64,000 bases of DNA from Botryllus schlosseri (taxonomy: Eukaryota): NCBI GenBank assembly GCA_051294905.1, contig CM119384.1, forward strand, positions 12,400,001 through 12,464,000, in the 5' to 3' direction. The first letter of the stretch is position 1. Every line of letters begins with the position of its first letter. Below the pieces are notes generated by a model, which was not told where the DNA came from, did not search any database, and worked only from the letters and a program-made list of their open reading frames with translations. A program made the position numbers and the translations under genes. Of this stretch, positions 21,952 through 49,761 are shown piece after piece.

Positions 21952-21957
21952 TTTATT
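21952..21957 (-). terminator. Candidate polyadenylation signal of VGLL4 (AATAAA)
   Basis: AATAAA on the minus strand ~460 nt after the stop, just before the TE-rich block starts. Confidence 0.4.
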
Positions 21958-22420
21958 CGCAGTTAATGTTGGGGGAAAGGCACAGTCTTGCAACAATAGC
22001 GAGTAACAACAACAAAGAATCACCGGGGCCCCCAGCCGCAGCCCCACCGGACGACAGGCCGGTCTCGCGTCCGTGCGAGTAGCAGAAACGACAAAAGCAA
22101 GGTAGCCACAGAAAGAAAAACAAGCGTACGCGAAAGGCGCGTTCAGACCTACGCCAAAGCAAAACTCACATCGCATGATTGCTATAATACACGTCCACAC
22201 GACGCGACACAACGCAACGAAACGCGAAGCTACACGACGCGATGTCGCAACCCTCTGCTTGTAAAACATCTGGCGGTTTTCCAGAGCCCGATTTCGGAAA
22301 CAACCGCCCCAATAACCTCGACCAAACTTCCAATTATCCGGCTCGCGGGCGCGGGACCCGCGCGCCGTTTCCTCGCCCCGCGCGGAGACATCTCCAGTTT
22401 TGACGCGACTGCCTTTCGTG

Positions 22421-23121
22421 TCACGTGGCGCGCTTTCCTTCCTCGCACGCGCCGTCGGTGGACAGGCGTGCTTTGGCGGGGTCTTCGCCATCCGCGTTTC
22501 GCGCCCCGTGTGGAGAGTCCCGCACGCGCTGGGGCGCAGCTTCGTTAGGAGGGTGCGGGTAAGGGTACTGGTGACCTTGCGGGACAGCGGGAGGGGAGGA
22601 CGTGGACGGGCTTTTGTTCGCGTTGGACAGCACGCTGTCCGCGCGAGGCGCGCTTTTTCCGCCGTCAGAGTTCGCACGCGCGCTTCCAGCCTCAGGTATA
22701 AAAGCAGACTTGGCTTTTACCTTCTGTCTGGGCGGGGCCGGGCCGGCCGGGTAGATTACAGTGGTGCCGGGCGGCGATTTTTCGGGTTTCCTGCTTTGAT
22801 GCGGCGAGGCCCCTTGCAGATAGTACCGGTCTCGCGCCAGAAACGGCTGCTCGTAAAACCGGGTCGGTGGCTCCTTCGCGTCCGGGTGTGCGGAATAGAG
22901 TCTGCCCGCCGATGCCGCGGCTACAGCCACCGAGTACGGCGGCAGCAAGTGGGCCGGGGCTGGGTCGCGGGCCTCGCCTTTGCCGGCGTGCACTTGCTCG
23001 TACATGGGACCCAGCGCTTTTTTGAAGTGCTCGTCCACGGAGCCGGAAATGTTGACCTTGTTCGAGGCCTCCTTGTAGTCTTTGCCGAGTGACCGCCGGA
23101 AATGCTCCTCCGGATCGTTCT
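22421..23121 (-). CDS. VGLL4: VGLL4 last coding exon with both TDU domains
   Basis: tacag|AG AAC GAT CCG GAG GAG CAT TTC CGG CGG TCA CTC GGC; TDU1 at 23110-23084, TDU2 at 23038-23009. Confidence 0.95.
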
Positions 23122-26100
23122 CTGTAGCGGAGACGAATCGTGATTAGCAACGTCGTGAATCTCTACCCAAGGACATGTGGAAAGTATGTATTCTAGGCAA
23201 CGTGTTGAATAAGAAATGAAAACTATGACACAGAAGCAGAGTTAGTGGTGCGAGCAGGCAAACCCAATTTGAGTACTCCGAAAAATTAAGTACTTCGTTG
23301 CTGACCAAGCCTGGTCCTTACCGACATACCGACAATGTTGTTTGTGGTATTCATGGTGTTTGTCGACTACTATGGTCATTTACACCAAGTCGATATTCCA
23401 TATCTTTGATTACACATCTGCCCATTTCTGGGCTTTTTGTAAGACACCGCTTACGCGGATGAGACGGCAAGGAGGAGCTTAGATAAATCTCCAACACTTA
23501 GGTAGGAATTGTGGAGTCGACCTCGGTATGACTCGAACCCACAACGGCCACAACCGATTTGTGTTGTAGCGGTGGATTCTTCCCACTACGTTATCTCGCC
23601 ACACACACCGACAATAATCGGAATTGAACAACGTTTATTGGACACCGGCGGAGCATGAACTGCCCGCAAATATCCGGCTCTAATTAGGCCTTCATTTATC
23701 CTCAAATCCAACACCGCGAGATTAAAAAGCGAGACTCAAAAACGTGTCGAAAACAGGTGCGGACGTACAGCGAGTCAGCGACAGATACCTAATTAGGATT
23801 TCTACTTCGCACACCAAAAGAGGGCTGTGATTGTTCAAAACAATATTCCGCTCGTATTGCGTTACACAGGGACAGCATGGACAGGCAGGTTCGAATCACA
23901 TTCCTACCACAATATCGCTTACGCTAAACACAGAAAAAATATTACATCCGTCAAGACTAAGCAAACTGCCTGTTCCACCACAGACCATCAGCAACCGCAA
24001 TCATTCAAATTTCGGATAGAGATCGATTCCCGACAACGCGTAATAGCGCCATAATTGACGACAAGGCACTGCGAGTATTTTCCCGCTTCGGGCTAAGAAG
24101 CGCTACTTCCTTTAGTAACTTATTCGACTCCGAAGACAGGCGCCGATTCTTCGAAAGACAAGCAACCGCCCTTGTACCGGGCCGAGACGCGCGCCGTACT
24201 TGTAAGGAACCCCTTTTAAGTATGCGACCGTACCGACTCCGACAGTCAACAGAGCGAATTTATGACACGGCAACAATTTCGTCATTGTTTAAATCGCGAA
24301 AAATCAAAAAGACTTTGGAAATCTGCTCGCCTTTGCCGTGCGCTACGTCACGCGAGAAATAGGTTAGTAACTACCGCGCGAGTCTGCGAGATTACACAGT
24401 ACGATCTCGGAAAAGGGATAGTTATCGAATCAAGCGCTGGTAATTGTAGCTATTCTTGACCGCGCTTCTAAAAAAAGACCTCATGAAGTCTCTTTTATAA
24501 GCTCCATTCCAGTAAGAGTTAAATTATCATCAATGGGAACCACAGTTCTATACAATTTTCCTATTGTGAAAGCCTTCAATCCGCGATTGGTGGTATCACC
24601 TCATACGGAAGTGTAGCAGAAACGTGTAGGCACTATAGAGATGTACGGACCATGGTTTTTCAGGATCCGGACCCTGTTTCCGTCTCAAATGTCGAAATCC
24701 GGATCCAAAAATACCCTGTACAAGGTTGAGCATCTGTTTGTCCCTATAGTCGAAATCTTTCCAATTACACTTCGGCAATGCATTTGAAGCTTGTAGATGA
24801 GGATTTTTTCGAAATAGTGATGCAATGCTGCAGCCGGCCGAGTCCAAGTTGAAAAAAATGGCGCAGTGAACAACAGGAAGTCACTTTCGTGCACTAGAAA
24901 TTTAGAATCTTTCCCAGGGCTGTCACATAGTGCAATAGCCATTAGGTATGGTCGAAGACATACCAAACTATCTTCAATGTCATGGAAACTGGCATAATTT
25001 CCTTTGTGATCGCAGAAAACAGTACACATTTGACCTTTCCACGCTACCCATACTCTCGTAACCTAATAACCGAATGATCGATTCGGAGTCGAAGCACTCA
25101 GATAATGCATTTTGACCAGCCCTCTACACGTACTGTCAAGGTCACTGCTCACTGTCACGTGAGCTTCAAGTTACTGATGAAGATTCCCCATCCGCGACAA
25201 GTGAACACTATCAACGGTAACAGCAACAAAGCCGGCAGGATGTTCGCCGCGGCTTACACAAAACACCCGCAAAACGTGACGCCGCGTCCGATGTAAGCCG
25301 CGTAAACCGCATGCTTTTCGAGAAGGTTTTAACGCTGCGAACGCGGAGGGATGGGCCCGATTTCGAAACGACTTCAAAAGGCAGCGCGATGCCGGCGGAG
25401 GGCTCGCGCGTGTTTACGAGAATTACAGGGCTACGTTCGGGCGGCAGGTGACAGGTGTTGGGCGATGCAGACTCGCCTCACGAGTACGAAATACTCTCCT
25501 ACATGCCACGCGCAACTGACAAAATCGTTTGGGAGTCGCGTAGCTGTGTTTAGATCTCGTTTCGGACGGGGAAAACCTGCGGTTGAGTACGCGCCTCGCC
25601 TTAGAAACGAGAAATCAGTTCAGTAAAGGGCATGGATTGGTATCTGGACATGGGTGGGATTCGAAACACGGACGTCGTCAGTACAGAAGTACTTCTACTT
25701 CACGGTATACTAAAGCAGGATTTGGCTATTTGCACTGCAGCACATACTCCCAAGTGCTCATGATTTCAGAATATTTATATTTCACAGTTTTCAGTTTGTC
25801 TGTCAAAACTAGGCTTCGAAATCATACTTTTTTCAAGTTACTTGAGTAGAAATTTAAGTCCCTTCTACTTGAGCAGCAACGACGGCAACGTTTAGGACCC
25901 GCAGACATCCCGTAACGTGCAGTGATTCAGATCTGGACTTCGAAGGTAATTATGCGAAATATAATCTCAGAGATTTCATCGCACTCTCGAGATAACGTGA
26001 GAGTTACGACCCGCCGCGGCTTTTCCAGACAACAAATCCACCGCAAAAATCGCCGCAAAAATCGCAAACGCGAGACAGCTTGCACACGCAATCAAACCTT

Positions 26101-29100
26101 CTATCGACTTGATTTTCCGTGTTAGCCAGCGAAATCACCCATATAATCGCAGCACACACACACCTATACCCTGTGGGTGCATTTTTGCCTACATTTGTAT
26201 TGAACAGCTTAGACTGGCGATACAAATCAGCACAACGCATTTCGTCACCTACAAATCGCGCAAAGCGCTATACTCGCCCAACAACCTACAACACCATCCC
26301 GGCTGGCGTACGACCGATCGCTATCGCCCGCAACAGCAATAATCCCCACTTTGTTCAAATTCACGGTACAGGGCGGCGGCGCAAAAGACCACCCATTCAC
26401 ATTACCAAAAGCTCTCAAAACAATGACACCACGCTTTTCGAGGCGCACAAATTGCGGGGCGTTTTCGGGGCGGAGGGCAAAACGGACCGATTTAGCGAGG
26501 GTTCGCCGGGTCTCGCGCCTCACGAACAACGGAAACGACAACCGCGTCATTTTCGCGCAATAAACGCCTTGATAATGACGCGCTGGAATTAGGCTTTATC
26601 CGTGCCCTTTTGTAAAGTCTGCGACGGGTCAGGCACAAGTTTACACAGTCGACACGAACGCATCCTGCTCGCGGATTTAGAACCGCTACTCAAACGATGT
26701 CGTGACGTCAATGTCAGTACGGATAATCGACACAACAACATCGAACCTAATATTTCCGAAGGCTTATTAATCTAGCAACAGACAATACATTCACATTGTC
26801 GAGTATATCCCAGTCGACGCATCTCCACTAACTCTCATCAGGAGCTATATCGCTGAGATATTGAAGTTCTGTCTTAATGAGTTCCTAGAGCGAAATGTCA
26901 GTAATCTAATTCTTATCTGATTTTTGGTTTTTATAAAAGGCTACACGAGAACTGCGGTATAGCACGAAAAGATTCTCTGATTTCATATGAACTGTTGTAT
27001 TTCTATCGAATTAGGAGTGTTATTCAATTCGCAAGTTTGTGTGAATTCGGTTACTCTAATTATAATTTAATTAGGAAAAGCTAATTATTTTGTAGTTGGC
27101 ATACTCTGCTGGACGGGGCCCTCTTCAGCTTTGACAGTGAAAGCGGTTAAACAGCAGACGTGGAAATGATAGAGTCGCAGGGTTCACCGATTGCTATTTA
27201 GTGTTGCCGTGTCAATCGTTTTGTGACACATGAATCAGGGCCAGCGCGCATGCGCGAATAGCAAATTCCCGCCCAGTCACACTGTGAATTGCGGCCACCG
27301 CTTGGCATCCGTCAATACGCGACAGACAGCGCCAATCACACAAATCTGCGGACGCGCACCGCCACGCTCTCGTGTTTGCATATCGCTGGATTACAGCCAT
27401 GACATTCTCCGGGTGTCAGCATCGAAAATCAGCTTTCAAAAGATTACAAGAGATAACAGATATTTGCGCGTTGCGCAACGGACGCGACTGGCATATATAC
27501 GGATAGGAATGGAATGCGACATCAAATACCGACAATGGAATCCGTCTGTTATGGTTATTCGGATTCGCTCCGGGCATCGATACAAGAGCTCAAGACGGAA
27601 TGCAAGACAAAGATAACGAATGGAGGCGATCGAAATATCAACTAACACAATTAGTCAACCAGCCCTATAGCTGTGTTGTAAATAATCGGCGACACTAATT
27701 CCACAGCCACCAAGCGAAATGTAGGGGCTTTTTCGTGCTGATTTTCAGCTCCACAACCTGTTTTTCACACGTACTACTTCAAGTTGCGAGTGCGGATATC
27801 AGGTCAGAAAAACAGAAACGAAAAACCACAAATCAAAGTCGATAAAGGGCGCGATTTCCAGCTGCTTTTCTCGCGTGCGAATCGGAATTTACAATATTGG
27901 GCCTGTCCGGCACAGACAGACGCGTGGGCTCAAGTATCGTATCTGTCTCGAACGTCAAGCCTTTCCAAATAGGTGCATTACAAGAATTTCATCGTGATTG
28001 ATGATATCTCAAGGTGTTCACATAATACTGAGCATTGGACCCCAAAAGCGACTCATCCCAGAGAGTTGATTAGTAACAACGTTTTCAGAGTGATCAAGTG
28101 GATTTCAGACAAAACTAGGCATAGAATACTTGATCCTTGGCTTCGGATACTTCTACTAGTAACAGAGTGAAATTTTACGTCCATGCCCAATGACATATGG
28201 CACGAAAACTAGCAAAAAACACCTTTCTTTATCCGACCGGGAAGATTTTAGAAAACAGTCACATACTTCTCGCAACATGCCCAGTAATTTAGCTGCTATC
28301 AGATTTGGATTACACCCAAACGCGCCGCCTCGACCACATCGTGTAGGCGTTATCGCTGCATCTCAAAATAGCAAAAATACGCCATGACGTAAAGTCGCGT
28401 TTCCACTCGTAGCCCGCGGTGTATACGGCGACTTTTCCAGAACGCCTCTATTCCTTTCCGAAAACTGCCGAATCGCAAAGATGCGATCGCGATGTAATGC
28501 CGACCGTGACCTAGCCACGACAATTGCTTTGCAAGAATCGCATTGCATTAGTACTTACGAATTTGGGTATTTACGGGCAAAGCCAACAGCATGCGTTGAA
28601 ATTGCAATTGTACACACTGATGGTCTGAGTTTGTTCGCTGAGTGCCGCTTAACAACTACGACGGGTGTTTTACTTGAAACCGCGTCGAACAGCGAATACA
28701 GAATCAAAAGATACTTAGACGGAGTAGTTCGGTTATGTTAGGGCCCCGAAATTCACCAGTCTTCAGAGTTTAGAGGTACTAAACGACAAAATATCAATTT
28801 GCCATTAGTGACATCTGACTTGTTCCATTTGAAAGGCGTCCAAGTCGCTACTAACATTTGTCGACCGAAGACCTAGCCAGACTTGGACAACTAGATAATT
28901 CTAGTTGTCTAATTTCACTAAATTAGAGCGAAATGCCAGTAATCTAATTCTAATCTAATTTGTGAAATGCTTCCATGCTCTAATTCTAATTCTAATCTAA
29001 TTTGTGAAATGTTCGTATGCTCTAATTCTAATTCTAATCTAATTTGTGAAATGTCCGTATTCTCTAATTCTATTTCTAATCTAATTATTGTTTTCCTGAA

Positions 29101-35100: not shown

Positions 35101-38100
35101 ACGGACGACAATCCCATCGGTTGGAATAAGTAAGCGTTTTCCTCCTAAGTTTACGACCGCAGTGGTGACGAACCTCAAACGCGTCTCACAGCAAAACGAA
35201 ATTGATAAGGTCGAAAATACCAAATCATATTCAACTAGGTGTATAACTTGCGTTATAATGTGGTCGCACATATGAAACTCACATATTTGTACTTATCAAC
35301 TGACTACTCGAACCGCGACCAGGGCCTGTTCGATTGTCTGTATCAGTCGCCAAAGCATGATTACGAGTTACAGACCGCGCTTACATCCAACGTCGACAAA
35401 GCCAAAACAAGATAATCGCCGAGCACGAGAAGAGGGTTTCTGACTCACGCACTTGGACGCGATCGCGCCGTACGCCGCAAAGCCGCAGCCCGAGTGGATC
35501 TCCATTACGTGAAACACGACCGCAGATAAGTCGCGGAAAAACCTCACGCTGCAATACCAGCAACGAGCGGAGGAAAGCCCTTTTCTGTAGCAGCGCACAT
35601 GAAACGCGGCGTAATTGTTTTCGCGACCCGCAACGTGTAATGAGATGTCGTTACGGCCGCCTTCTCGAAATCGGGACCGGATTAACGCGACCTCGCGGCA
35701 ATTACGCCTAGACAGTATAATGAATCACATTCCTACATTTGTAAATTCGGAGCTTATATTACCGTACGCGCGTAATAATACAAATAATACATATGCCGTT
35801 ACTGGGAGCTAGCATTGGATACGCGCGATTCGACAGACAAGCGAAAAGCGAAGTATCGCTACAATGTCAGTGGGACAGGCTCAGATGGTCGAAGTCCTAC
35901 GTGGCCCAAACATCGTTGGTACTCAAGTATCAATACCCTCGTAAATTTCTACTGAAGTATACAAGTCAGGTCTATAGTTTGACGTGAAAAAACGGATAAC
36001 TTCAAGGGTAAGTAGTGCAATTGGGCGAAACCTACGAAAAATGAGGTGTAGTTCGTTACTAATCCCTTATATATATAAATCTGGTTCTTCAGGGGCGGTA
36101 TGGGCACACAACGTACCAAAATCGATAACGACAATTACGTTAGTAATAGAATGACTGCATCTATTGCAGTACCAACAACTTTTAATAGCTCTGCGATGTT
36201 CAATTTAACCGTGGCGCTGCGATCGCATATAACACCTCAAATACGCCACACGCCCACTCACCGGAAATAAGCTGCTTCACCCTCTTCGGGTCCTTCCTGT
36301 CGTCTTTCGCGTGGTGATAATCTCTCTCGCCCTTGAATTTCTCACGCACAAACGCGCCGCCCTCCTCGCGCATCGCCATCTCTTCCTCCATCAGCTTACG
36401 CTTGCGGTTGCGCTCCAGGTCGGGCGCGTGCTGTCGCAGCATTGGGTTGGGCCGGTACGGTTTCGAGGAAGCCTGCTGCTGCTTGGGGGAGGCGTCCCGC
36501 GCGGGCCGGTCCGCTGCCGAAGGAGATTGGCGGTAGTGGCGATGATCAGCCGATGGTATGCCACTGCCGCTGGGCGGCGAGTGCGGTTCTGAACATAAAG
36601 GGTGGGGCGTGATGCAGGGTTTGAAACGTTTCAGCCGGATCCAAATGGGCTGAGCAGGGGTACGTTAACATAATCCTGATTTGAAGTGTATACCACAAAA
36701 AGCAAAATACGGCTACAAATTGTTAATAATCTTCATTTTCCCCCATTGTCACTCAAACTCGTTTCGTTGACGGTGCAAGGTCCGATCTAGGTTTCCCTAT
36801 TTTAACAATCCAAAATATGGATAGGTTACTATCACCGTTACCTTGCATTTGTGGCGCTAACAATATAAATTCCACCAAAAATAGCCACCCGATGCTGATT
36901 AATCCAGCTTCGATAAATTGACTGTTCGCGACGATTCGAATTCGCAATCACAATCGTGGACTCTAGGTAGATCCATCAACGCAGTACGGCGGCTTTAACG
37001 AACGACGAAATCATCACTACCTTGCTATTGTGACGTCGAGAAAGAAAATCCCTAATTCCCACTGTTAGTAACGATTAGAAGTTTCAAGTGTTTAATCCAA
37101 TCGCCGACTCTAATTCCTGCGACGCAGTACGGATTTAAATAACGTTAAAAAAGTAACCAATCCGCCTTCATTTCGAAGACGGTAGCGTCTTTTCAAAACA
37201 GCAGGCAAACCGTCAACGGCCCCTCATCTCTCTTAAGAGCATGCGTGCCGAATCTCCAAATTACCGGCTAAATATAGCCAAATCCAACTAGAGCAACCTC
37301 AATTCCCCTGCCGCCTTAAAACACACAATCCCAACGCACACCTAACCGCCGCGCATACCTTGTCTCTGATGCTGCTGCTGCTGCGCTGGCTTGCCCATCT
37401 GCGGGCTTTCGTTCGCCTTCGCGCCCGATTTCGCCGGGGAATTGCTCTTCGGCCGCGCCTGCGTTTGCATGGGCGGCCTGTCGCGCGCCGCGGCCGGGCT
37501 CGACTTGCCGCCGTCCTTGCCTTGCGGCGAGAAATAGGCGGCGTTCTTGAGCGCGGCGGCCGGGTAGTCCTGCGGGACATGTGAAATAGAGGGCGTAAAT
37601 GAGCGGGAAACGCAGTCACGTGACGGGCGGCGTACCTGAGGAAGGCGCGCGCCGGCCAGTAGCTGCTGCTGCTGTTGGTACTGTAGCTGCAGTTGGAGGT
37701 TCACGAATCGGGCATATTCCGAATTTTGTTGCTGAAAGATGCATGTATTTTATAGGCAACACATGTAGGATGGTGCTCAAGCTGAAGTAGCCATGTTCAA
37801 GACAGTAAAAAGGCAAGTATTCTATACATTTTTTCCAACTGCGTGGTTTTAGGCTCAAAGCAGGGATATTCATCGAGTATTATTTAGAGAGCGTTCGCAA
37901 TTCACAACGTCTATCGGTCTTCACACGTTTTCTCAATACCTCTGTCACACCACACCAAATGCGTTTCATTGATATACACAGTATCATGTTATGTTATTAT
38001 TAGGATTATCATACATCAATTTGATTACAGACCCTCTGCCGAACAAGTTCGAAAAATACAGTAACGTCCAGAACGTTTGGAAAGGCTGGTATTCTTAGTT

Positions 38101-41100
38101 ATCCACTAGGTTACTTGAAACTTCACGTTGAAGTTAGCGTTATTTGGAATTAACAACTGCATCCATTACTTACTAATTAAGATGGACGACATTTAACGTT
38201 GTTGTCAGAGTTTGTTTGGTGGCCTATACAGGTATGGGAACAACAACAACTGTTTACTTTAATTTTCAATGACGTAGTAAACGGTTGAGAAAGATAATAC
38301 GATACACAGTAGACAGTGCACACCTGCATCGTTGCCTTGCAAAAACGAGATACAGAGGTGTACGCAAGTTAACGTAGGGGCCTACTAATTTACAGAACGA
38401 AAAGAAGCCAGCCATGCTTGAGTTCTACACATCCAAAAACTATCATCTCACCTCTCCGGCTTTGTAAACGGACGCCAGGTCTCCTCCTTTAGCCGCCATC
38501 GCTTGCGCGAGCTGCCCGCTCAGCATATAATGCGCCCCCGGATGGCCGGCCAGCGCCGGCATCAGCTGCGGGTTCAAGAACGGCGGCATCCCCGCAACCA
38601 GGTACGGGTTCAGCGGCGGCGTCTCGTTCCTCTGCTCCCGCGCGTCTCCGCCCCCGAAAGCCGCCTGGTTCGGCGAGCGCGAGTGCCCGGCCGCCATCAA
38701 CAGGTGTTTCGGCAGCTCCGTAGACACCGTCGCCGCTTCCGCGGTACCGTTCGGGATTTTAGCGCGGCTGGTTTGCGCCAGACCGTTTGATAAAGGTGAC
38801 GCCGGGCGACTGTTATGTCTGTCGTGTGCGATCGGGCTGCCTCTGGCGAGGTGATGATGGTGGTGGTTCTCCAGAGACCTGCGTTTGGCGTCCAGGCCGT
38901 TTGGCGAGCGGTCCCGGACGGGCCGATGGTAGGGCCCGCGTTCGTCGCGCGCGCGAGGCGACGGCGAACGATCACGGGGAGCATGGTGTGCCGTTAACCC
39001 GCTCGAATGTGGAATGTAAAAGGCCCTGAAAAAATATATACTTCAACATGTCTATTAGAGTATTGGAGAGATAAATGGTACGGGCAGTTGGACGAGACAA
39101 CGCGAAAGTCAACGCTCTTAAACACAGAGGTAATTGGGAACGAAGTGCTACTGCATCTCCAGAGTACTCCTGTAGGGTGTAGGATTATTACGTACTCACA
39201 GCACAAGGCAATGGGGCGTAATCACAAGAAAACAGTTTCGAGTGATGATGGAGGAGACAGACGAGAAACGCTGTACTGCGTTTTGCGTCCATGATAAAAC
39301 AAGTTCAAGTTCACTTTAAGCGCCAATTAGGACGGGTTGTTTACGGGTTTGTAGCGGGTTGTGCGAGTTTGGTGATTTTCCGGCGGTGTGCCAGCGCGCG
39401 TAATTGCTACACGGATAACGGATTCCAGAGAGGCGGTGATTATTTCCGACAACAAGTCACGAATGGGCCAGACCGCATCAAGAACGATTCGCTACCTGGC
39501 CGCTTGCGATCACTGTTGATTGTACAGTACATGTACAGTACACTGTATTAGCAACAAGGGGTAAGGTATATTTATTCGTTTGAGAAGGCTGGATGTTCGT
39601 ATAGCTCTAGCAGTATTGGTCATCAAAGCAGTCAGTCAAGTTACTCTAGCGGACGAAGTGACGCCGTAATGTGCTACTCATTTACAAGTAACGGTACCAA
39701 TCTCAAACACGTCAAAACTAAGTAGAAGATGTAGGTCTATTCAGCTACCGCGATATCGCCAGTTGCTACGAGTTCTACTAGCATATCCTAAAATTACTTT
39801 CTTCTTTACAAAACCAGAAGCATCAAGTATATAGTTTTGTCAAACAAAACTCATGTAGAAGTGAAAGCAGTCTAAAAATAGAACCAAGTAGCACAAGCAT
39901 GCAAATCCAGCTTTAGTACTCGAAAAACGTAGAGTACTTAGTTACTGACCACCTCTCTAATTTGAGTAAATAAATAGTGTATACAAGCGACAAGTCACTG
40001 CAAGCGTGGCCCCGCAAAATTACACTTTCCCTTCAAGACGGTAGGCTGCGCTGAGACTATGCGGCAACATCGATGAGATTATGTCCAACTATAGTTCGTA
40101 TACGAACCAGCACATATATTAATTGCGGGCTTGCGGCATTGCGCGTAGCGGATTGCGGAAAACGTGACATGTTAAAAGCTGTAATTCGCTCTGGTTTTTC
40201 GGATAACGAATCATGAATCGTAAGCGGGCGCGCCTTGTAATTATACTACAATAGAATTTCGATGCGGAATTCGGAATGCGCCGCGTCGTCAAGGGTGCCC
40301 GCTGCCAGACTGCGCCGGGAGCGCGAACTCCGGCGCGTGGATAATCTCTTAAACACGGAAGCGCATTGATGGATATCCAAAATTACGCGCGGTCGCCGCA
40401 ACAGTTCATCGGCTGGTACCAGATACAAAAATCCAAACTATTTGTCAGCGATTCGGTATCTCCGCGACGCATCTACCAAGCGAATCGATCACCGGCGAAG
40501 ACGCGCAGTCATTCGAAAAATGCGCACACGGTCGCGTTCATAAAAACACCGAATTACAAATTTCATTCGGTGCACAATCGATTATATTTGGCTGGCGTGT
40601 GAAATTGATGGCAAATTAAGCACCAGTGAGACAAGATCACCACAATTTTCATTTTACGGTCATTCATTTTGTCAGCTTGACCTGCAATGCACATTTCCGC
40701 TGCTGCATCTATTGATATCTATTGATACAGCAAACTAAGCGTAATGGCACTTAATCCAAACACAACCAGGCGCTGCAGCGCTAAGCGATGAAGCGGGTCG
40801 ATGTGAGCGATTTCAATTCAGTCCTTCCCGACATACAAACTGATCCCCGGCGTATATCCCTCTCCTAAACAAGCGGGGACATTCAAATTCTACATGCTGG
40901 CCGTGTTTTCAATCGTGCAACAAACCGGACGCCTACATGATCACAAGCAGTGATGTTGGCTCTGACAAGGCGACTTTCGGTTTATACCAAGCCAGCAACG
41001 GATTATGACTGTTGGAGCGGGTGGAGCAACAGTTACAACTAACCAGCGCATGTTTAAGGTACAAATCTGTGTGGTGATAGGATAGCCGTGAATGAGCTTA

Positions 41101-44100
41101 AAGGTCCCGCAGTGTAAGGCCTGACCCGGACACGGGCATCTAGATAACTCTAATTTGACTAATCCGAGCGAATTAACGGTAATCTGACATCTGGTTTTCC
41201 TGAAAATGCCACAGTATAACTGTATGCTGCAAAACGAGACATGCTTGGTGTACTGTACTGTACGTACATATCTTCGTAAGATTCATGATAATGAACTCTG
41301 ATTCAATATGAGGTGAGCTTGATTTTTGATCTTTCTCATTCATTCATTTGAATGCTTAATATGATTCCCAAAGTGCAGACAAGGGGCCTTCTACAACGGT
41401 AGGCCTATAAAGTAGGCTACAAGCTGCAAAACCCAAATGATAAGTTCACCGAAAGTGCAAAATCTACGATACAAACGAAATGCAGGTTGTAAAAAAGTTT
41501 CAACTTCGTAAACAATTTTGACATCTTTTGACCTAACGCTACAATTTTGACCTACTTTTGACATGTCAAAAAAAATCGCCCTAGAGATCACAGTTGGCGT
41601 TGTTCAAGTTGGGTTAATAATGCGACAGTAACAACATCACTCTATATCCCACAATTACCAACTTTCAATTAGCGCAAATTGCGTGAGGGCCCACTATCCG
41701 ACAGACGTTCAAGTAGGCACTGCCGACGATGAATAACGCACGCCATTAACCGAGGTCACCGCTTAGCCTTTTCGAGGGCGTATGTCACACAACTGGAGTT
41801 GACAGGGGATCGCGTTTCAATGAGCGATACGCGGGCACCGCGCCAGCGCGCTACGCGTCGCTTGCTTTCACACGGCCCGGCCGTACGAGAGCGCCGGGCT
41901 AAAAGCGGCTCTCTTCAGACGCTGTGGCCGTTTCGGTCGCAGTGATTTTCAGTAACAACGCGACCGCGACATATCGCACTATTCTCCATAGCGAGCGCGC
42001 CTTTGAAGACGGGTAGAATAACTTGTCCCGATAGCGATCGGGTGAATATTTGCGGCGGGCGGAGGTGAAATTGGATGCCGGCTTCACAAAACATGACGTT
42101 GAGAGACGGGTCAACGGCGATATGCTGGGTGTCAAAGAACGGGCGAATTACGCCGTTTTGGGATCTAATGCTGCAACCACAGAAATTCTACCCGAGTGCG
42201 TTTTGCGAAAAATCAGCAGAGATGGTCCATACCGAAATACTTCTACATCTACTTGAACAGTTTTTTGGCAGAATCGCCCACTTGTTACACTTTGGATTTT
42301 ATGAAGAAGTAAGTAGTTTAGCGACACGCTTGCTAAACCTTTACGAGTGAAAGCGGCCTGCCAACTGGGAAAATGATCCCCTGTGTCGTGTAAGTAATAG
42401 AACACATATCGGAAAATCGCACCTATTTGTAGCGTCACCGGTTATTTTGCGTCAGTCGCGAATACGCACGCTTCAATGTCGAGGTGTCCCCTCCGACTAA
42501 CTGCTAAAATCGTGCGACCCGTCGATCAAATGTACTTTTTGAAACTACTTGGAGTACTTATCAGCCCCTATTACTTTTACTTGTGCAACATTTGAAAAAT
42601 CTTTAAATTGCTAGTCCTGCTCGTAATTGACTGGCGATTGACGTCTCTTCTACGGCATAGGAAAAGTAAAGAATTCGAGTTTAGCATCAAAAATCCGAAA
42701 GTACGCAGTCAGCATTTTCCAGTAATATCGTGACCTAACGCCAACCCGTCCTAAAGAGACATTTACAGCACCGTAGACTTCATGTAACGAACGCTCGAAG
42801 ACGGGAGATATATTGCCAATAAACCGCGTAAGCTGCATCGGTATGCGGAATGTGCCTTACTGCGGACGAAACCCGCCTCGTGCAGCGCAAGTCAAATATT
42901 TGCCCCGTACATTTCACGCCGCGTCTAGCCAATATTTGCTTTTCGGATCGCGGCCCGCGATATGTGCTAAGGCGCGATTTTGCCGGGCGAGAGGTCACAT
43001 TTCAAAGAAACAAACGAATGGCGACCTGGCGCGTTATTTGATTTACGCGCAGCGTTTCCGGCTAATATACAACATATCGCGAGTTCACACAGTCGCAAAA
43101 CGCGATACATTTTGAATAGCACTCAACGCTGGGCGCGCACCATAACATTCAAATCCGACTTCAAAATTTTGAAGCTGTTATTGTGGAAGTACAGTATATA
43201 CTGCATAGGTCCATTGTTCATTGTCCTATTTTAACCTAAATATGCTTACATATGATTAGCTATCTATGAACTTAATAAAGTTTATATAACTATAGACATC
43301 AGCGCATTAGTTTCGCACGTCTGCATTGAAGCGGGTCGGAATCTCAGGAATGCAACGCGTATTTTCCGGACAACCGCCAACCACAATGCACAATCGAGAA
43401 TAAACAGACTTGTTCTCGCCGAAATTGAAGCGCTCATTCACAAGATCTTCTTTCCGATCGCATCTTATGTCTAAATTTAAAGAATTCCGCAGGAATGCGC
43501 TTCTCGGAACTGCGCTACGCGGCCGCGCGTACGCGAGTAAATCCGCGAGTTTAAGCCTCGTCTGTATCGCATTTCAACAGATCACGATCGCGTCTCACAC
43601 GCGACCCGGTCCGATACCGCATAATCTGCACCGCAAGCACAAAAAACACTAATCGAACACACCCGAGTCAATTAGCCGGGGCGCGCAATCAAAGGCCCCG
43701 TTGCCGCTAAAAAAGCGCGGAATCATGGCACGTCTCAAGCTCGCAAACACACCACGCTTACCTGCAAAGCAATGTTTACAGGAGCTGGCAGCACTTGTTG
43801 AACACAATTTCAAAGTGAGAACCCTTAACACCAAGGCTAGCACCGCAAATAGCAACATGTTTGCACAAGCGCCAGACATCAAAGTATCCAATCAGAACTA
43901 CGTGGCCAGCGCGTAAGCTACAAAATCTACAACCTGACAAAAGGCAGACCCGTGACCTCTGACCTGGTTTCAAATTCGAGCAAACGCCAGCATTCCAGAA
44001 AGGGTTTCCGGGCTTTATTCCAATTGCGTTGGATCAAGACGAACGGGGAACGCATATTTCCATATTTCCTTCCCGGCAATTGCCAACCGAGTGCGCGATA

Positions 44101-47100
44101 AGCACGTAATACTGTTTGGTTCGTAAACTAGTAATAACAGTGACCCTGCTTAGATTCCCGACGCTAGGCATTCACGGGAATTTACGCAGTGGACGTTTAG
44201 TAGATCGCCTATAAATCAACGCGTTTTATATTATTTGATACTCGGAACGGAGCGGATTTCCTAGTCCCCCGTATCGTTTTACAGCCGGTAAACCCGGCAC
44301 GAGTTTACATAAATACGGGCCGCTGTATTTGAATGATGAAAATACCGATTCTAGATAACCGATATAAATAAATGGCGAACGCAACCAAAACTACATCACG
44401 ACAACTAACCGACACCAAGACAACGCAACCGAGACTTATCAAACGTCATCACTAAAAACGAAAATTGGTACAGATAAAATTTGGCCGCGCTAGTTTAAAC
44501 CAGTGAACGTTGCTATAGTTGCTAATTATGAAGGGCTAATTATGAAGGTTGTAAAGTACAAGAAACATCGCTAATTATTACTCAATGCAAAAATTTCAAA
44601 GATACGTCAGTAATCCAAAATCATATCCACTTGATGGGTAAGCATTGAGCAGCGTAATTTAGCAGAGCCTACTCGCCAACTAGAGTTCTTCCAAAAGTAG
44701 AATTACTTCGTTGATAAGATGTGTTCAATGTAGCTACTGTTCTTACTCAACTAGAAGTAATGTCGTATATCTTTAAATACAAGCATCGATACGTATATCC
44801 CAGCACTAGTTTTGCCGAAAAAACGAAGCTGTCACACAAAATCGAAAGTAGTTAAAAATCATAGCAACTTGAGTAATCAGCTAAAGACGCAAAATCTATT
44901 CGAGCACCTGTGGCGTAGGCGTATACACGCCTAAAAGCAATCGGACAAAAACGCGACGCGGATTAATGTGGTCTCGAATCGCCCCGCGCTATCTAGTTCA
45001 AGTACTTCACACGCGGAGCCACCAACAAGCAAGCACAAAAGATGCAGGAAATACTCACGGGACTGGAATCTTCCGTCCGTTCTCGTCCGTGACCGAATAC
45101 GGCGGCACCTGCTCGCCGCTGACGGTCCTACCGCGCGGCTGCTTCGCATCGCGATCCATCTCGCGCGGCCTGTAACCGGACCTATCCGGATCCGGTTTTC
45201 GTACACTTTCACCCGCCGGAGACCGCGACCCCTGACCCGCCTGCGAGGAGAACATCGCCGCAGGCGATCGCGACATGATCAAACCCGCGGTCGAACTGTT
45301 GATTTGAGACTGTACCAGGGAGGGATGATGGAATGGATAAGAGGGCGCCGTGGATTTACTCCCGTTGGCGAGATTCGGGGATTCGGTCCGGCGCTTCGGC
45401 GGAAACGGAGATCCGGATCCGGGCGAAACCCCGGCAGGGGGCCGTAACATCCCCATCGCGGCAGGCCAGTGTTCTGGGTACCGCAGTAATAACTCAGGCT
45501 GCCCTGCCAGAGAAAGCCCCGGCTGCAGTCTACCCGCCATGGCGCTAAGCGCCAGCGCGTCTTTCGACATGTCCAGCCCTTGCTGTGTGGCCACCAGCGT
45601 TTTCAAATACTGATCGGTAAGCTGCGGGTTGAGTCCGGGGTAAGAAAACTGCATACCTTCCATCATACGCTTGTACTGCTCTAAAGCCACGGCTGGATAA
45701 GGGTTAGCCGCTAACATGGGCGATATCTCAGCCCCAGGGGGCCGGGCAGGCATCAACAACGTGGGATGGTTTGGTAAGGGGTACATTAAGCCTGGTATGT
45801 GTAACCCAGCGGCCGCGCTTACTGCAGTTAACCCATCATTAGGGGATCTATTCGGAGATGACACCAGCCCTTCTGGTTCTTTGAGAACACCTGGCGCTCT
45901 ACTCAGCATAGACTCCAGCCCTGGCGCTGACTGGTACAGCAGTGGGTACATGTTCCACGGGTGCTGCATTCCGGGAAGTGGTATCCCGGGGTTGGTGATC
46001 CTTGCCGGGTGGGCTGGCCCGGCCGAAGATAGAGTCGTGGCTGCCGGCTGTTGCAGCAGTACCATTGGCTTGGTCGTGGCGTGCTGTTCGCCGCCTCTGT
46101 CCGAGGCCGGCGAGGTGTTTCGGCGCGGAATAATAGCTGAGAGTCGTTCCGGAGATTTGCTGCGCGCGGCGTCTTCCGGAGTCTTCGGGTAGACGTGCTC
46201 GTGTCTCTGTATATTTCCGTTCCGGCGTTCCGGATATGCGGCGTTCTGTGGGTAGTTGTAATATCTCTGCGGATCTTGGCGTGGACTGTTGTCTACGATT
46301 GCCGCCCGTTCTGTGCTATTCCCGCTTAATCGGCGATTGCTATCTCCTGCAAAAGCGAACGCACGATTTAGGGCCGACGCCAGCTTTCGAGAGGCTGAAT
46401 CATCGTGGCATAGTATCGTATCCAAGACTGTTTGTGACCATAAAAGGGACTTTTGCACGAGTTTGGGAGAATCGCAGTTTGGGAGGGTTATAATCATACA
46501 ACGAAACACAAATGCGTATCGCCAAACAGTTTCGAATCTCCTGCCTCACTACGTGTACGCCGCTTCATATTTACCAATGATATCTAAAACCCTACATATC
46601 GCTGGGTATTTACGCGGAAAGCGTTGTTGGTATTATGGTAAGCACTTATCAGCCATATAGACACCGCTACTTCAACAAGTTACATCCATATCGCACGGTA
46701 GTCAGCAGTCAGGAGTCTTTGTTATGTACAAGGAAATTAAAAGAGATGATATTACTAGGATCCTGATCAAAGGGTGTGTCATGAGCTCTTGACTAAACTT
46801 GACAAAACGGATCGGAAGATGGAAAATAAGGAATCATGCTGACGCATAGTATATCAAAATTCACACGCTTTCGTTGAATATATGAGTTAAATGAGTTATA
46901 CTACAGGACAGTGACAAACGCGAGAGTCGAACTAAATGCACATACGATGGGACATAAAATCATTCCGCGGTAAGCAAGTAACAATAGAGCTACGCCTCAT
47001 AGTAAACATATCGGTCGCCAACGGATAACACACAGTGACAAAGAAGCTGGCAAAAAATTCAACACCTCCACGACAAAGACGCGAATTGTGTGTTTACCGC

Positions 47101-49761
47101 AGATATTTTTACTAATCCAGTTTCAAGATGGATCCAACCGTGCACGACCGCCGTGGCGTATCGGGTGAACCGGAATTAGATCCGCGATTTCGGCGAAAAG
47201 CAATAACAACGCAAAAACCGCGCTCGTATCGCAAAAACTCGAAAATGTAGCGAAAAACCATGACACGCGGCACACAGAAAAAAAACACGAAACAAACTAC
47301 CCCGGGGGTACGGACGTTACACGCACGATGAGAGGCTTACAATTTCGATCGAGTAGACGCGAAGCCATTGTCCTTTTATGAATGAGCCCGCTGTTTCTAC
47401 GCTATCAGATGTGGCGTGCGCTGTAAGCCGATAGTCCGCCTCGCGTTTAACCATGCAAGACCGTGTGGGCGGTTAAGGCAATTTTTCCGGATTTTGTTAC
47501 CGTCGTTAGGCCCGATTTAACCAGGCGACACAAGACGCGTCGCAGATGAGTTCCAGACAAGGAACAGAAATAAGGAAGAAGCTACAAACGAACAACACCG
47601 TGAGTCACTGGATGCGGTGTCGCGTGTCTAAATAGTCAAGATTTACAGCCGTACAAGGCAAACTCCAAAACGACACAAATTAGGACCAATCACGGAACCG
47701 CGTCATGAACATTGAACAAATGCATTCCGCTGCGAGGCTCGGTGATGCGTACAACTTGTACTGAATCAGCACGCGTATCCTACCGACCGCTAACATAACT
47801 TTGTTTTAACAACGTCGTAATTCAATTCCGAATATTCGCAGTACATATACACTTACGACATCGGGCAGAATAAACGCAGGGTCACGATCTTGGATTACGG
47901 TCAGCGGACACTGATGAATGCTACCAAAGTGAAAATTTAGTGTTCGCTGCCCGATATCAAATGTCAAAATCACAATACGGGCGCGCGCGTTTCCCACGAC
48001 TCAAGTCGGATGCGTCATCTTTCCGGATACGTCATCAGAAACCGCTCATTCACCAGGGAGATGGAATTATGATAAGTTTCTGCAACAACCATTATTTATT
48101 CCAACTATTTCGTTGAGACAGCGGCGGCAATCGAGTTATTGATACACGCACGGGTGTGCTCAGCAAAATTTATAGTGCGGAAGAGTCTCTCTTTTACGAA
48201 TAGCGAACCTATACGAGAGCTCAGTTAGATATCTGGTTGCAATAAGGTAGCCAATCCGAATCGCGGTTGTCAATTGTTATGACGTCACAATTAGAATACC
48301 GCTTTTTAGCGAGTTCACAGTCAACAGTCCTCCGCTCATTTCAGTTATTGCACTCAATCGACCGGGTCAATCCATTTAAAAGAAATACAGGAAAAGCCAT
48401 TGACTGCAACAGCCGCGCGCTACTCCGCGTTGCGCAGCTTGCTCGATTCGCAAACTCATTCAATCACGGCAAACCGGATGTTATTTTGTCTGCATGAATC
48501 GCGATTGAGCGCAATCCGGCGATCTCTGTGACGGCGTACGCCGAGCATTAGAATCGGAGTGTAAGGTCCACCGGGTTCAAATTTCAAATTTACACAACCA
48601 CGAACCAACCATAGTTTATCGCTAATCGGAAATAAATTGATAATACCAGCGGGCAAGGCAACCAATATTCATGAATGAACAAGAACAATGAACATCAAGT
48701 TCATCGTGTGTACTATCTTCAAATTATTGAACTGCCACACAAATCAAAACAAGTCGGGCTATGACTTCGAAATACCGCGCCGGAAAAAAATCACAGGTAA
48801 CAGAATAGCATACGCAAGCAAACCGCGATATCCTACTCAATTTCACTTCACCGCAAGCTGGTGGGCGGTTGATATTACGCGCCGTATCTACGCCATCGCA
48901 GTCACGAGCTCGAGCATAGTTACCGAAGCCCGCAACGCCGGCAATAGCTTCGCGCAATCGAGTCATCAATTGATCGCAGTACTTAGCACACGAACACACA
49001 ATAACTCCGGTGTTGAATGGGCCCGCCGATAAAATAACACCGGACTAATTCAGAGCAAGCGCCGTTGATAGAAAGACCGTTTCTCCCAACTCTAGCCTGT
49101 CACGATTCAACACAACTGTGTGTCCCTGCGCGTGCGATGGAGATCAATATAGACAAAAAATTCCCGGACTATCGTTACCGCCTCCCATCGAATACCGACA
49201 TCCAAAAATGAGCCGACACACTACGCTGTTTTAATAAACGAGTTCTTTTTACGGAGCAATTCCGTCACGATTCCTAAAACTGGCAAACCGTCACAAATTC
49301 AAAACGATGCTATCACCATTATCGCATACATCATCTCGCGTGAACGCATAGTAATCAAAAAACTGTGCAGAATCGATCCATCACGCCGACGCAACAGCGA
49401 AGCATAACTCCCAGACAATTTCTGTAATGCGACCGCGTACCTTATGCGCAAACATGCGGTTTCGTAATTTCCATCGACGCCAGGAAAATCGCTACAAGTT
49501 GATACGCGCAGCAATGCGTAGGAACCAAAATCGCCACCAGATAAGGCGGCGCTAAATCGATCATTGAAATGCCACCCACTGTGTAACGAATCTCCGGTCA
49601 CCGGTAAATCAACGCAGTGGATGTTCGAGATGCCTAGCATTTTGAAAACTTGATATATATATACCGTACACGGCGTTCAGTGTCAATTGTACTGGGCACA
49701 TTTCAAACACACCTTCTTACTTACCATTTTGATCAAACCGAACTATAAAATATGCACACAT
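22421..49761 (-). CDS. VGLL4: Vestigial-like 4 (Tondu-domain TEAD cofactor), ~1,077 aa predicted
   Basis: Tandem TDU motifs DPEEHFRRSLGKDYKE and SGSVDEHFKKALG match VGLL4/Tgi. Exons 49761-49725 (tentative), 46346-45059, 39025-38452, 37731-37636, 37569-37359, 36588-36262, 23121-22421 join GT-AG in frame (3234 nt). RKRK NLS-like motif in the 36588-36262 exon. Confidence 0.85.
23325..23600 (-). mobile_element. tRNA-derived SINE, family A, full length
   Basis: A box TAACGTAGTGG (23593-23583), B box GGTTCGAGTCA (23539-23529); body shared with 3472-3632. Confidence 0.8.
28878..29819. mobile_element. Non-autonomous hAT-like element with subterminal 42-bp repeat arrays
   Basis: TIR CAGACTTGGACAACTAGA / TCTAGTTGTCCAAGTCTG; arrays at 28941-29087 and 29593-29783; no TSD found; related fragments at ~26890 and ~41140. 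Confidence 0.78.
31800..32316. mobile_element. hAT MITE, 517 bp
   Basis: TIR TAGGGCTGGGCA...TGCCCAGCCCTA; exact TSD GTAATTAG at 31792-31799 and 32317-32324. Confidence 0.92.
32790..33066 (-). mobile_element. tRNA-derived SINE, family B
   Basis: A box TAGCGTAATGG, B box GGTTCAATCC, then GGTCACACCAAAA...CTTGGCGCTCAGCATTAG and an A-rich tail. Confidence 0.8.
36262..36588 (-). CDS. VGLL4: VGLL4 exon (phase 1-1, NRKRKL motif)
   Basis: ttcag|AA CCG...ATT TCC G|GTGAGT; open frame; phase fits both neighbours. Confidence 0.85.
37359..37569 (-). CDS. VGLL4: VGLL4 exon
   Basis: cgcag|GAC TAC CCG...AGA CAA G|GTATGC. Confidence 0.82.
37636..37731 (-). CDS. VGLL4: VGLL4 Gln-rich exon
   Basis: ttcag|QQNSEYARFVNLQLQLQYQQQQQLLAGARLPQ|GTACGC. 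Confidence 0.8.
38452..39025 (-). CDS. VGLL4: VGLL4 exon with His5 tract
   Basis: ttttcag|G GCC TTT TAC...GGA GAG|GTGAGA; continuous open frame with LHHHHHNE. Confidence 0.85.
45059..46346 (-). CDS. VGLL4: VGLL4 large Pro/Ser/Gly-rich exon (1288 nt)
   Basis: Lies inside ORF 45055-46509; ttttgcag|GA GAT...GTC CC|GTGAGT; phase 2 matches the 39025 acceptor. Confidence 0.82.
49725..49761 (-). CDS. VGLL4: Candidate first coding exon of VGLL4 (MCAYFIVRFDQN-G), or an 18-nt micro-exon 49742-49725
   Basis: Perfect donor G|GTAAGTAAG in phase 1, matching the 46346 acceptor; in-frame ATG at 49761; internal ttttatag acceptor. Confidence 0.45.

What the first reader, a model, noticed from the sequence alone, without database searches (positions are those of the whole stretch)
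22421..49761. Giant VGLL4: about 1,077 aa, with ~840 aa of low-complexity sequence ahead of the TDU pair
Seen: seven phase-compatible exons give a Pro/Ser/Ala/Gln-rich protein with Q and H runs, an RKRK motif, the two TDU motifs only in the last exon, and a ~200-aa tail after them. Established: human VGLL4 is ~290 aa and Drosophila Tgi ~500 aa; both bind TEAD/Scalloped via TDUs and antagonise YAP/Yorkie. Inference: a lineage-specific expansion of disordered regions could change Hippo-pathway repression, for example through condensates or new cofactor sites. The ORF track hides this because it shows only unannotated fragments and starts the last ORF at TDU2.
Basis: partly seen in the sequence, partly recalled or inferred. 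Interest (0 to 1): 0.7.

Follow-up and report, generated by a model that had tools for sequence, protein, structure and literature searches.

The report
Giant ascidian VGLL4 gene, confirmed
The window holds most of a real, transcribed gene for a 1,139-residue version of the Hippo-pathway repressor VGLL4, about four times the vertebrate size, and several related sea squirts share it but nobody has described it.

Summary
Spliced transcript contigs from three studies join the minus-strand exons 39025-38452, 37731-37636, 37569-37359 and 36588-36262. Their overhangs read into the end of the large exon (46346-45059) and into the start of the TDU exon (23121-22421).

Two real 5' coding exons lie outside the window, at window-equivalent 70977-70864 and 80816-80708. 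They were found by homology and have matching splice phases.

The full model has 8 coding exons, all GT-AG, and gives 1,139 aa. About 907 aa come before the TDU pair and 196 aa come after it.

A 1,283-aa Styela clava protein, named "uncharacterized", and a 1,242-aa protein from a spliced transcript contig of another species are collinear with the model from end to end. Styela has the same 8-exon layout.

The TDU pair matches the TEAD-bound Vgll4 fragment of PDB 4LN0 (E 2.5e-11). It is the only such locus in the genome.

The extra sequence is compositionally biased and predicted disordered, but it is conserved (45-70% identity) and is not simple low complexity.

Verdict: a new, lineage-restricted variant of a known family. 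Function is inferred, not tested.

The parts
45059..46346 (-). Coding exon 3 of 8 (the large exon, 1,288 nt, aa 75-503). It enters in phase 1 after a ttttgcag acceptor and ends at a GTGAGT donor.
   Evidence: The overhang at 39025 in X1, X5 and X9 equals the reverse complement of its last 30 bases. The X5 contig continues about 1,284 nt beyond exon 4, matching this exon's length. It is collinear with P0004 aa 83-563 and P0008 aa 73-523. Alignment A1 has 61% mean column identity.
38452..39025 (-). Coding exon 4 of 8 (574 nt, aa 504-695). It contains the H5 run and several SP-rich blocks.
   Evidence: One X5 contig lies on 38452-39025 and is joined to 37731. The 37731/38452 joint is also seen in 2 raw RNA-seq reads of X23. 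It is homologous to P0004 aa 573-747.
37636..37731 (-). Coding exon 5 of 8 (96 nt, aa 696-727), with the Q5 run.
   Evidence: Joints 37731/38452 and 37568/37635 (cut +1) appear in X5 and X9, and the latter also in X1. The frame is verified.
37359..37569 (-). Coding exon 6 of 8 (211 nt, aa 728-797). It is separated from exon 5 by a 66-nt GT-AG intron (37635-37570).
   Evidence: The 66-nt skip is seen in contigs of three runs, and the 36588/37359 joint in X1 and X5. Styela has the equivalent short intron.
36262..36588 (-). Coding exon 7 of 8 (327 nt, aa 798-906). It holds the invariant KPYRPNPMLR block and the RKRK basic motif (36406-36395).
   Evidence: The overhang before 36262 in X1, X5 and X9 is the reverse complement of the TDU exon's first bases. 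RKRK sits in the same alignment column in all three species.
22421..23121 (-). Coding exon 8 of 8 (701 nt including the TGA stop, aa 907-1139). It holds the TDU pair and a 196-aa conserved tail.
   Evidence: The ctacag acceptor and phase 1 fit exon 7. The match to PDB 4LN0 chain C has E 2.5e-11. The tail is 64-65% identical to P0001 and P0008 and 45% to Styela.
23081..23110 (-). TDU1 (EEHFRRSLGK).
   Evidence: AlphaFold2 predicts a helix at residues 3-11 of the exon.
23009..23038 (-). TDU2 (VDEHFKKALG). Its GTG is where the mechanical ORF starts.
   Evidence: AlphaFold2 predicts a helix at residues 28-36.
21952..22420 (-). 3' UTR, with an AATAAA signal at 21957-21952.
   Evidence: The X5 contig extends 1,164 nt past exon 7, which is 701 nt of exon 8 plus about 463 nt. 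The AATAAA was read.
49725..49761 (-). It is not supported as the start of this protein. An alternative 5' exon is not excluded.
   Evidence: It is phase-compatible by sequence. It has no similarity to the N-termini of P0008 or P0004. The homologous N-terminal exons lie outside the window.

Best explanation
This is the single VGLL4/Tgi-type gene of a stolidobranch-like ascidian.

Shown: it is transcribed from the minus strand and spliced from 8 coding exons spread over about 58 kb. Six of these exons are in the window. The product is a 1,139-aa protein.

Inferred: the two short TDU helices near residues 908-943 bind the TEAD transcription factor, as mammalian VGLL4 does in PDB 4LN0. This keeps TEAD targets repressed and competes with YAP. 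About 907 aa before the TDU pair and 196 aa after it are intrinsically disordered but conserved. They carry short conserved motifs:
- an N-terminal MSKLxMLTEAADLVE block;
- an invariant KPMVLLQ block;
- three basic-S/T sites (RRxT, KRRT, KRRS);
- 24 conserved SP/TP sites;
- RKRK and KRVK basic motifs that look like nuclear localisation signals;
- an LPxY motif just after TDU2.

These regions most likely act as a regulated docking platform for phosphorylation and for cofactor or WW-domain binding, added to the basic TEAD-binding module in this ascidian lineage.
For: - One transcript: spliced contigs from three studies link all in-window exons, including the 13-kb jump from 36262 to 23121.
- Open frame: the 3,420-nt CDS has no internal stop, and all introns are GT-AG.
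- Conservation: it is collinear end to end with the 1,242-aa P0008, whose 3,729-nt ORF lies uninterrupted on a 4,430-nt transcript contig, and with Styela clava XP_039250445, 1,283 aa. The Styela locus has the same 8 exons.
- VGLL4 identity: the TDU pair matches 4LN0 chain C at E 2.5e-11 and a shark VGLL4 at E 3e-15. It is the only TDU-pair locus in the 495-Mb genome.
- Disorder: AlphaFold2 gives mean pLDDT 42.5 for the large exon and 50.4 for the last exon, where helices form only at the TDUs. Disorder-promoting residues make up 64%.
- Constraint: each exon is 42-74% identical to P0008 and 19-59% to Styela, and motifs are conserved in the same alignment columns.
Against: - No binding or repression assay exists. 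TEAD binding rests on motif homology alone.
- Pfam PF15245 is hit only below its cut-off (24-25.6 bits against 27) and only at the profile's last 30 positions.
- The link from exons 1 and 2 (outside the window) to the large exon rests on homology and splice phase, not on reads from this species.
- The contig runs are labelled 'RNA?' by guess, although removal of GT-AG introns implies RNA.
- Only 6 raw RNA-seq reads lay on the stretch, so expression in that sample is low.
- The acceptor of the TDU exon was not examined for other upstream partners, so shorter isoforms cannot be excluded.
- The AlphaFold2 alignments were shallow (4-5 sequences).
Confidence: 0.85

Rival explanations
1. The giant form is a minor isoform. 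The main VGLL4 product would be a short protein from an internal promoter or alternative first exon close to the TDU exon, as vertebrate VGLL4 uses two promoters.
For: Vertebrate vgll4 has two promoters (PMC12922143). The X5 contig stops at about the 5' boundary of the large exon, which would fit a branch in the assembly graph there. The single read-laying run did not cover the TDU exon's acceptor.
Against: All three contig sets that reach 36262 continue into the TDU exon. The X5 contig is one 3,659-nt record carrying exons 3-8 at a single mean depth of 29. The only long transcript-derived proteins recovered from relatives are the giant form. No short TDU protein of this lineage appeared among candidates of 128-408 aa, other than a genomic read-through ORF.
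Confidence: 0.12
2. These are two neighbouring genes. The 36-46 kb exons would belong to a separate gene, and the joined contigs would be read-through or assembly chimeras.
For: Logan contigs are de Bruijn assemblies and can be chimeric. A contig across two genes does not prove one transcript (tool caveat).
Against: The same junction, with exact GT-AG removal and a preserved reading phase, appears in three independent studies. It also appears in a transcript of another species (L001) and in the Styela gene model. There is no stop or start codon between the parts. The N-terminal block and the TDU-bearing last exon are conserved at the two ends of one collinear ORF in three species.
Confidence: 0.02
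3. The extra 1,100 aa are functionally neutral disordered filler that drifted in by expansion. Only the TDU pair matters.
For: AlphaFold2 predicts no folded domain in the two regions tested, the large exon and the last exon. There is no Pfam domain. Composition is biased, and the H and Q runs are species-specific. One run shows a 3-nt length polymorphism in a Q run.
Against: Identity of 45-70% is kept across species that differ as much in the TDU exon's tail. There are 83 invariant columns across five sequences in the large exon. In all three species, 24 of 31 SP/TP sites, three basic-S/T sites, RKRK and LPxY lie in the same columns. Exon structure and length are retained at 1,139-1,283 aa.
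Confidence: 0.08

Closest known systems
Vertebrate VGLL4 (TEAD-bound tandem-TDU fragment in PDB 4LN0; shark VGLL4 P0002, 272 aa)
   Same: It has tandem TDU1 (EEHFRRSLGK) and TDU2 (VDxHFxKALG) with a short linker, aligned over 46 residues to 4LN0 chain C at E 2.5e-11 and to shark VGLL4 at E 3e-15. The TDUs are predicted as short helices. The rest of the protein is disordered in both.
   Different: It is about four times longer (1,139 against about 270-290 aa). Nothing outside the TDU pair aligns significantly. The linker is 3 residues shorter. A 196-aa conserved tail follows TDU2, where the vertebrate tail is about 30-50 aa. The Pfam VGLL4 model is not reached at its cut-off.
Drosophila Tgi (SdBP)
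   Same: It is a two-TDU partner of the TEAD orthologue. Tgi also carries PY motifs that bind Yorkie's WW domains, and short conserved cofactor motifs (10.1101/847707). The ascidian protein has a conserved LPxY just after TDU2 and an invariant KPMVLLQ block loosely like RPSVIT.
   Different: The window protein has no canonical PPxY and no PxDLS-type CtBP motif. The resemblance of KPMVLLQ to RPSVIT is weak and the motif order differs. No Tgi sequence was available here for direct comparison.
Styela clava LOC120328107 (XP_039250445, 1,283 aa, 'uncharacterized protein')
   Same: It is the orthologue. It is collinear over the whole length, has the same 8 coding exons including the short intron between exons 5 and 6, and shares the N-terminal block, RKRK, the TDU pair and the tail motifs.
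   Different: Identity is 19-59% per exon. It is 144 aa longer and lacks the H5 and Q5 runs. It carries no functional name in the database.

Membership tests
VGLL4/Tgi subfamily of vestigial-like cofactors | Two short (about 10-aa) Tondu motifs in tandem. The family is defined this way in PMC12922143. | tested here: met
   EEHFRRSLGK and VDEHFKKALG are separated by 14 residues in the last exon. They align to both TDUs of 4LN0 chain C and of shark VGLL4.
VGLL4/Tgi subfamily of vestigial-like cofactors | Sequence match to the experimentally TEAD-bound VGLL4 fragment. | tested here: met
   phmmer against PDB: 4ln0_C, E 2.5e-11, 47 bits, query residues 4-49 against chain residues 9-57.
VGLL4/Tgi subfamily of vestigial-like cofactors | Pfam PF15245 (VGLL4) at its gathering score. 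| tested here: inconclusive
   The window exon scores 24.0 bits and Styela 25.6 bits against a cut-off of 27. Only profile positions 188-217 of 217 are matched. The rest of the profile models vertebrate-specific sequence, so a sub-threshold score is expected for a distant orthologue.
VGLL4/Tgi subfamily of vestigial-like cofactors | Physical binding to TEAD/Scalloped and antagonism of YAP/Yorkie. | not testable with these tools
VGLL4/Tgi subfamily of vestigial-like cofactors | Accessory conserved regions shared by Tgi and VGLL4: the N-terminal region, a PxDLS-like CtBP motif and the RPSVIT motif (10.1101/847707). | tested here: inconclusive
   The N-terminal block MSKLxMLTEAADLVE is conserved in three ascidians, but its likeness to the vertebrate isoform-B N-terminus is recalled from memory only. 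No P[LVIM][DN]L[ST] motif occurs in any of the three. KPMVLLQ is invariant but only loosely RPSVIT-like.
VGLL4/Tgi subfamily of vestigial-like cofactors | It is the genome's orthologue rather than a divergent extra copy. | tested here: met
   A six-frame search of the whole 495-Mb assembly with the TDU pair finds only this locus.
VGLL1-3/Vestigial subfamily | A single, longer (about 24-aa) Tondu domain. | tested here: not met
   Two short TDUs are present. Pfam Vg_Tdu is hit only weakly (16-19 bits against a cut-off of 27) over 13-14 residues.

The most novel reading that the evidence does not exclude
The roughly 900-aa conserved disordered N-terminus and the 196-aa tail would form a lineage-specific regulatory platform. 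Its elements are multisite SP/TP and basic-site phosphorylation, an LPxY that recruits the YAP WW domains, and helical or hairpin micro-motifs. The platform would change how TEAD default repression is set in stolidobranch ascidians, for example by multivalent or condensate-type assembly or by direct capture of YAP. This group includes colonial species with whole-body regeneration.
Probability: 0.2. Interest if true: 0.6.

Novelty: new variant of a known kind. Interest (0 to 1): 0.4.

Why it matters
VGLL4 is the main TEAD-bound antagonist of YAP. It is usually treated as a small protein whose activity lies in about 50 residues.

A conserved form four times larger, and the only VGLL4 in its genome, gives a natural experiment on what sequence outside the TDUs can add: regulation, cofactor docking or multivalency. 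It occurs in the invertebrate group closest to vertebrates.

There is also a practical point. Public annotation calls the Styela orthologue 'uncharacterized', and ORF-level views show only fragments. Hippo-pathway inventories of ascidians may therefore miss their VGLL4.

Tried and rejected
- N-terminus inside the window: regular-expression and tblastn searches for the N-terminal block found nothing. The exons were then found outside the window.
It is phase-compatible but has no homology.
- Pfam on the separate ORFs gave nothing, except a sub-threshold DMRT5_DMB hit (15.8 bits against 25) on the 38443-38727 ORF, which I take as compositional. Pfam on the N-terminal 36-80 aa of three species gave nothing.
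- Motif scans found no PPxY, PxDLS, 14-3-3, LxxLL or EH1/WRPW motifs conserved in all three species.
- The shark VGLL4 and the P0001 contig could not be fetched as DNA. Conservation of the intron position before TDU1 in vertebrates was therefore not tested.
- Literature searches for VGLL4 with ascidian, Ciona or tunicate, and for the Styela accession and locus name, found nothing relevant. A search for the remembered vertebrate N-terminal peptide found nothing.
- The scan's own notes hold nothing on VGLL4, TEAD or Hippo.
- Two other long ORFs in the window (15587-16249 and 52365-52916) have no Pfam hit.
- Proteins of 409-682 aa were not covered by any length-limited search, so mid-sized orthologues (for example in Ciona) remain unsampled.
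- The strand signal of the 3 raw read pairs in X23 is too thin to use. Transcript strand rests on the GT-AG orientation.
Full report
**What is in the sequence.** The last exon on the minus strand reads ...ENDPEEHFRRSLGKDYKEASNKVNISGSVDEHFKKALG..., followed by about 196 further codons to a TGA at 22423-22421. This is a tandem pair of short Tondu motifs. Those fragments are 45055-46509, 38443-38727, 37342-37704 and 36200-36442. Pfam recognises none of the fragments.

**Are the exons joined?** I laid contigs of three runs from three studies (X1, X5, X9), plus raw reads of one RNA-seq run (X23), on 35900-39400.
- Three joints with CT..AC ends on the + strand (GT..AG on the minus strand) are seen: 36588/37359, 37568/37635 (66 nt, cut +1) and 37731/38452.
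- In all three contig runs the letters hanging over at 36262 are the reverse complement of AGAACGA(T/C)CCGGAGGAGCATTTCCGGCGGT. This is the first 30 bases of the TDU exon, after its ctacag acceptor at 23121.
- The letters hanging over at 39025 are the reverse complement of the last 30 bases of the large exon, just before its GTGAGT donor at 45059.
- One X5 contig of 3,659 nt carries 1,164 nt before exon 7, then exons 7, 6, 5 and 4, then 1,284 nt more. The 1,164 nt equal exon 8's 701 nt plus about 463 nt of 3' UTR, ending at an AATAAA at 21957-21952. The 1,284 nt fit the 1,288-nt large exon.

The runs are only guessed to be RNA, but clean removal of GT-AG introns in three studies is hard to explain otherwise. 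Low-depth contigs that run through the donor at 36262 and the acceptor at 39025 look like unspliced precursor or DNA carry-over.

**The 5' end.** The large exon starts at an acceptor (ttttgcag|GA) at 46346 in phase 1, so a start codon must lie upstream. Relatives begin MSKLEMLTEAADLVE... (P0008) and MSFSLEMLTKAADLVE... (Styela). No such sequence is in the window. A six-frame search of the whole assembly found it on the same contig and strand. G000:C14:12480709-12480816 is 74% identical over 34 aa (E 1e-4), and a second exon lies at 12470865-12470978. Both have GT donors and an AG acceptor in the phases required. In window-equivalent coordinates these exons are 80816-80708 and 70977-70864.

**The full model.** Joining all eight exons gives a 3,420-nt ORF with no internal stop and a 1,139-aa protein. 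The in-window part is 1,065 aa.

**Relatives.** phmmer of the large exon against 1.84 billion representative proteins returned only three hits. One is a 1,283-aa NCBI protein of Styela clava, XP_039250445, named 'uncharacterized protein LOC120328107'. The other two are genomic ORF fragments from Logan assemblies. A word-indexed search with the Styela protein found one more full-length relative, P0008 (1,242 aa). Its ORF lies uninterrupted on a 4,430-nt Logan contig, so it comes from a spliced transcript of another species.
- Both full-length proteins align collinearly with the window's exons and with the assembled model from the first Met to the last residues.
- Identity per exon is 42-74% to P0008 and 19-59% to Styela.
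- The Styela locus has eight coding blocks at the corresponding positions, including the short intron between exons 5 and 6.

The giant architecture is thus conserved in at least three species, with a fourth suggested by P0005. By its closest relatives, the window comes from an ascidian related to Styela.

**Is it VGLL4?** The family is defined by two short TDUs (PMC12922143).
- The window's pair matches the Vgll4 fragment crystallised with TEAD4 (PDB 4LN0 chain C) at E 2.5e-11 over both motifs and the linker. It matches a 272-aa shark VGLL4 at E 3e-15.
- Nothing else aligns with the shark protein.
- The Pfam VGLL4 profile is hit only at its last 30 positions and just under its cut-off. I read this as the expected behaviour of a vertebrate-trained full-length profile, not as evidence against membership.
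- The TDU pair occurs only once in the 495-Mb assembly, so this is the genome's only VGLL4-type gene and not an extra divergent copy.
- AlphaFold2 places helices exactly on the two TDUs and nowhere else in the last exon.

**What is the extra sequence?**
- Composition: P 11.9%, A 11.9%, S 9.5%, R 7.6%, G 7.5%, with almost no C or W. Disorder-promoting residues make up 64%.
- Structure prediction: AlphaFold2 gives the large exon mean pLDDT 42.5 and pTM 0.15. It finds only three or four short helices (around QYKRMMEG and DQYLKTL) and a confident hairpin over YSVTDENGRKIPV at its end. The alignment held only five sequences, so this is indicative.
- Complexity: strict low complexity is minor, at 6.4% of 25-aa windows below 3.0 bits against 2.4% after shuffling.
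- Conservation: the region is well conserved. The large exon has 83 invariant columns across five sequences. In all three full-length proteins, 24 SP/TP sites, three basic-S/T sites (RRxT, KRRT, KRRS), RKRK, KRVK and an LPxY directly after TDU2 fall in the same columns.
- Species-specific runs: the H5 and Q runs are not shared. One run carries a 3-nt insertion in a Q run.
- Known Tgi/VGLL4 motifs: Tgi and VGLL4 share an N-terminal region, a PxDLS-like CtBP motif and RPSVIT (10.1101/847707). Here there is no PxDLS or PPxY motif. The invariant KPMVLLQ is only loosely RPSVIT-like. The likeness of the N-terminal block to the vertebrate isoform-B N-terminus rests on my memory alone.

**Mechanism.**
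- Shown: one gene, one spliced transcript, a giant conserved ORF, a canonical TDU pair and predicted disorder elsewhere.
- Inferred from established knowledge of VGLL4/Tgi: the TDU helices occupy the TEAD surface, and the protein represses TEAD targets and competes with YAP.
- Further inference: the conserved disordered arms act as a phosphorylation-regulated docking platform, and the LPxY is a possible WW-domain (YAP) contact, as the PY motifs of Tgi are.
- Untested: condensate formation.

**Rivals.**
- A dominant short isoform from an internal promoter cannot be excluded, because the TDU exon's acceptor was not covered by my one reads call. Nothing found here points to it.
- Two genes or a chimera is very unlikely, given three studies, a second species' transcript, the Styela model and the preserved frame.
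- Neutral filler is unlikely given the conservation.

**Novelty.** Among 5.8 billion protein clusters, only 15 proteins of 683-2,173 aa share any 5-residue word with the TDU region. Only the two ascidian proteins score. The large exon has no detectable homologue outside this group. Proteins of 409-682 aa were not sampled, so Ciona and other invertebrates remain open. I class it as a new, lineage-restricted variant of a known family. The gene model is solid and worth annotating. It is of moderate biological interest until a function for the added sequence is shown.

Noticed in passing
window 37369 (exon 6, Q run near aa 790): The X5 contig carries a 3-nt insertion (TGC on the + strand) inside the CAG run. 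This would be a one-glutamine length polymorphism between individuals or strains. Many single-base differences between runs and the assembly were also listed.
   Followed up: no
window 35900-36291 and 38996-39349: Low-depth contigs (X1 record 1, X9 records 9 and 15) run straight through the exon 7 donor and the exon 4 acceptor into intron sequence. This could be unspliced precursor RNA, intron retention or genomic DNA in these libraries.
   Followed up: no
window 38443-38727 (-), within exon 4: There is a weak, sub-threshold Pfam hit to the DMRT5 DMB domain (E 0.015, 15.8 bits against a cut-off of 25) over the stretch NPYLVAGMPPFLNPQLMPALAGHPG. It is probably compositional.
   Followed up: partly
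window 45061-45100 (-), end of the large exon: AlphaFold2 gives pLDDT 78-90 for a beta-hairpin over ...PPYSVTDENGRKIPV, despite a 5-sequence alignment. A second PPYSV occurs just after TDU2 (aa 967), where it overlaps the conserved LPxY. This may be a repeated short binding motif.
   Followed up: partly
window 21823-22677 (-) and 22400-23092 (+): Long ORFs of 230-284 aa overlap the last exon, one in another frame of the same strand and one on the opposite strand. They look like by-products of the GC-rich (about 55%) coding exon, not genes.
   Followed up: no
window 15587-16249 (+) and 52365-52916 (+): Two further ORFs of 220 and 183 aa have no Pfam match. The second lies inside the 24.5-kb intron between coding exons 2 and 3.
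   Followed up: partly
G000:C14:12464001-12480816 (beyond the window's right edge): The gene's first two coding exons, and presumably its promoter, lie 6.9-16.8 kb outside the window. The gene spans about 58 kb, and any window-bound reading of it is truncated at the 5' end.
   Followed up: yes
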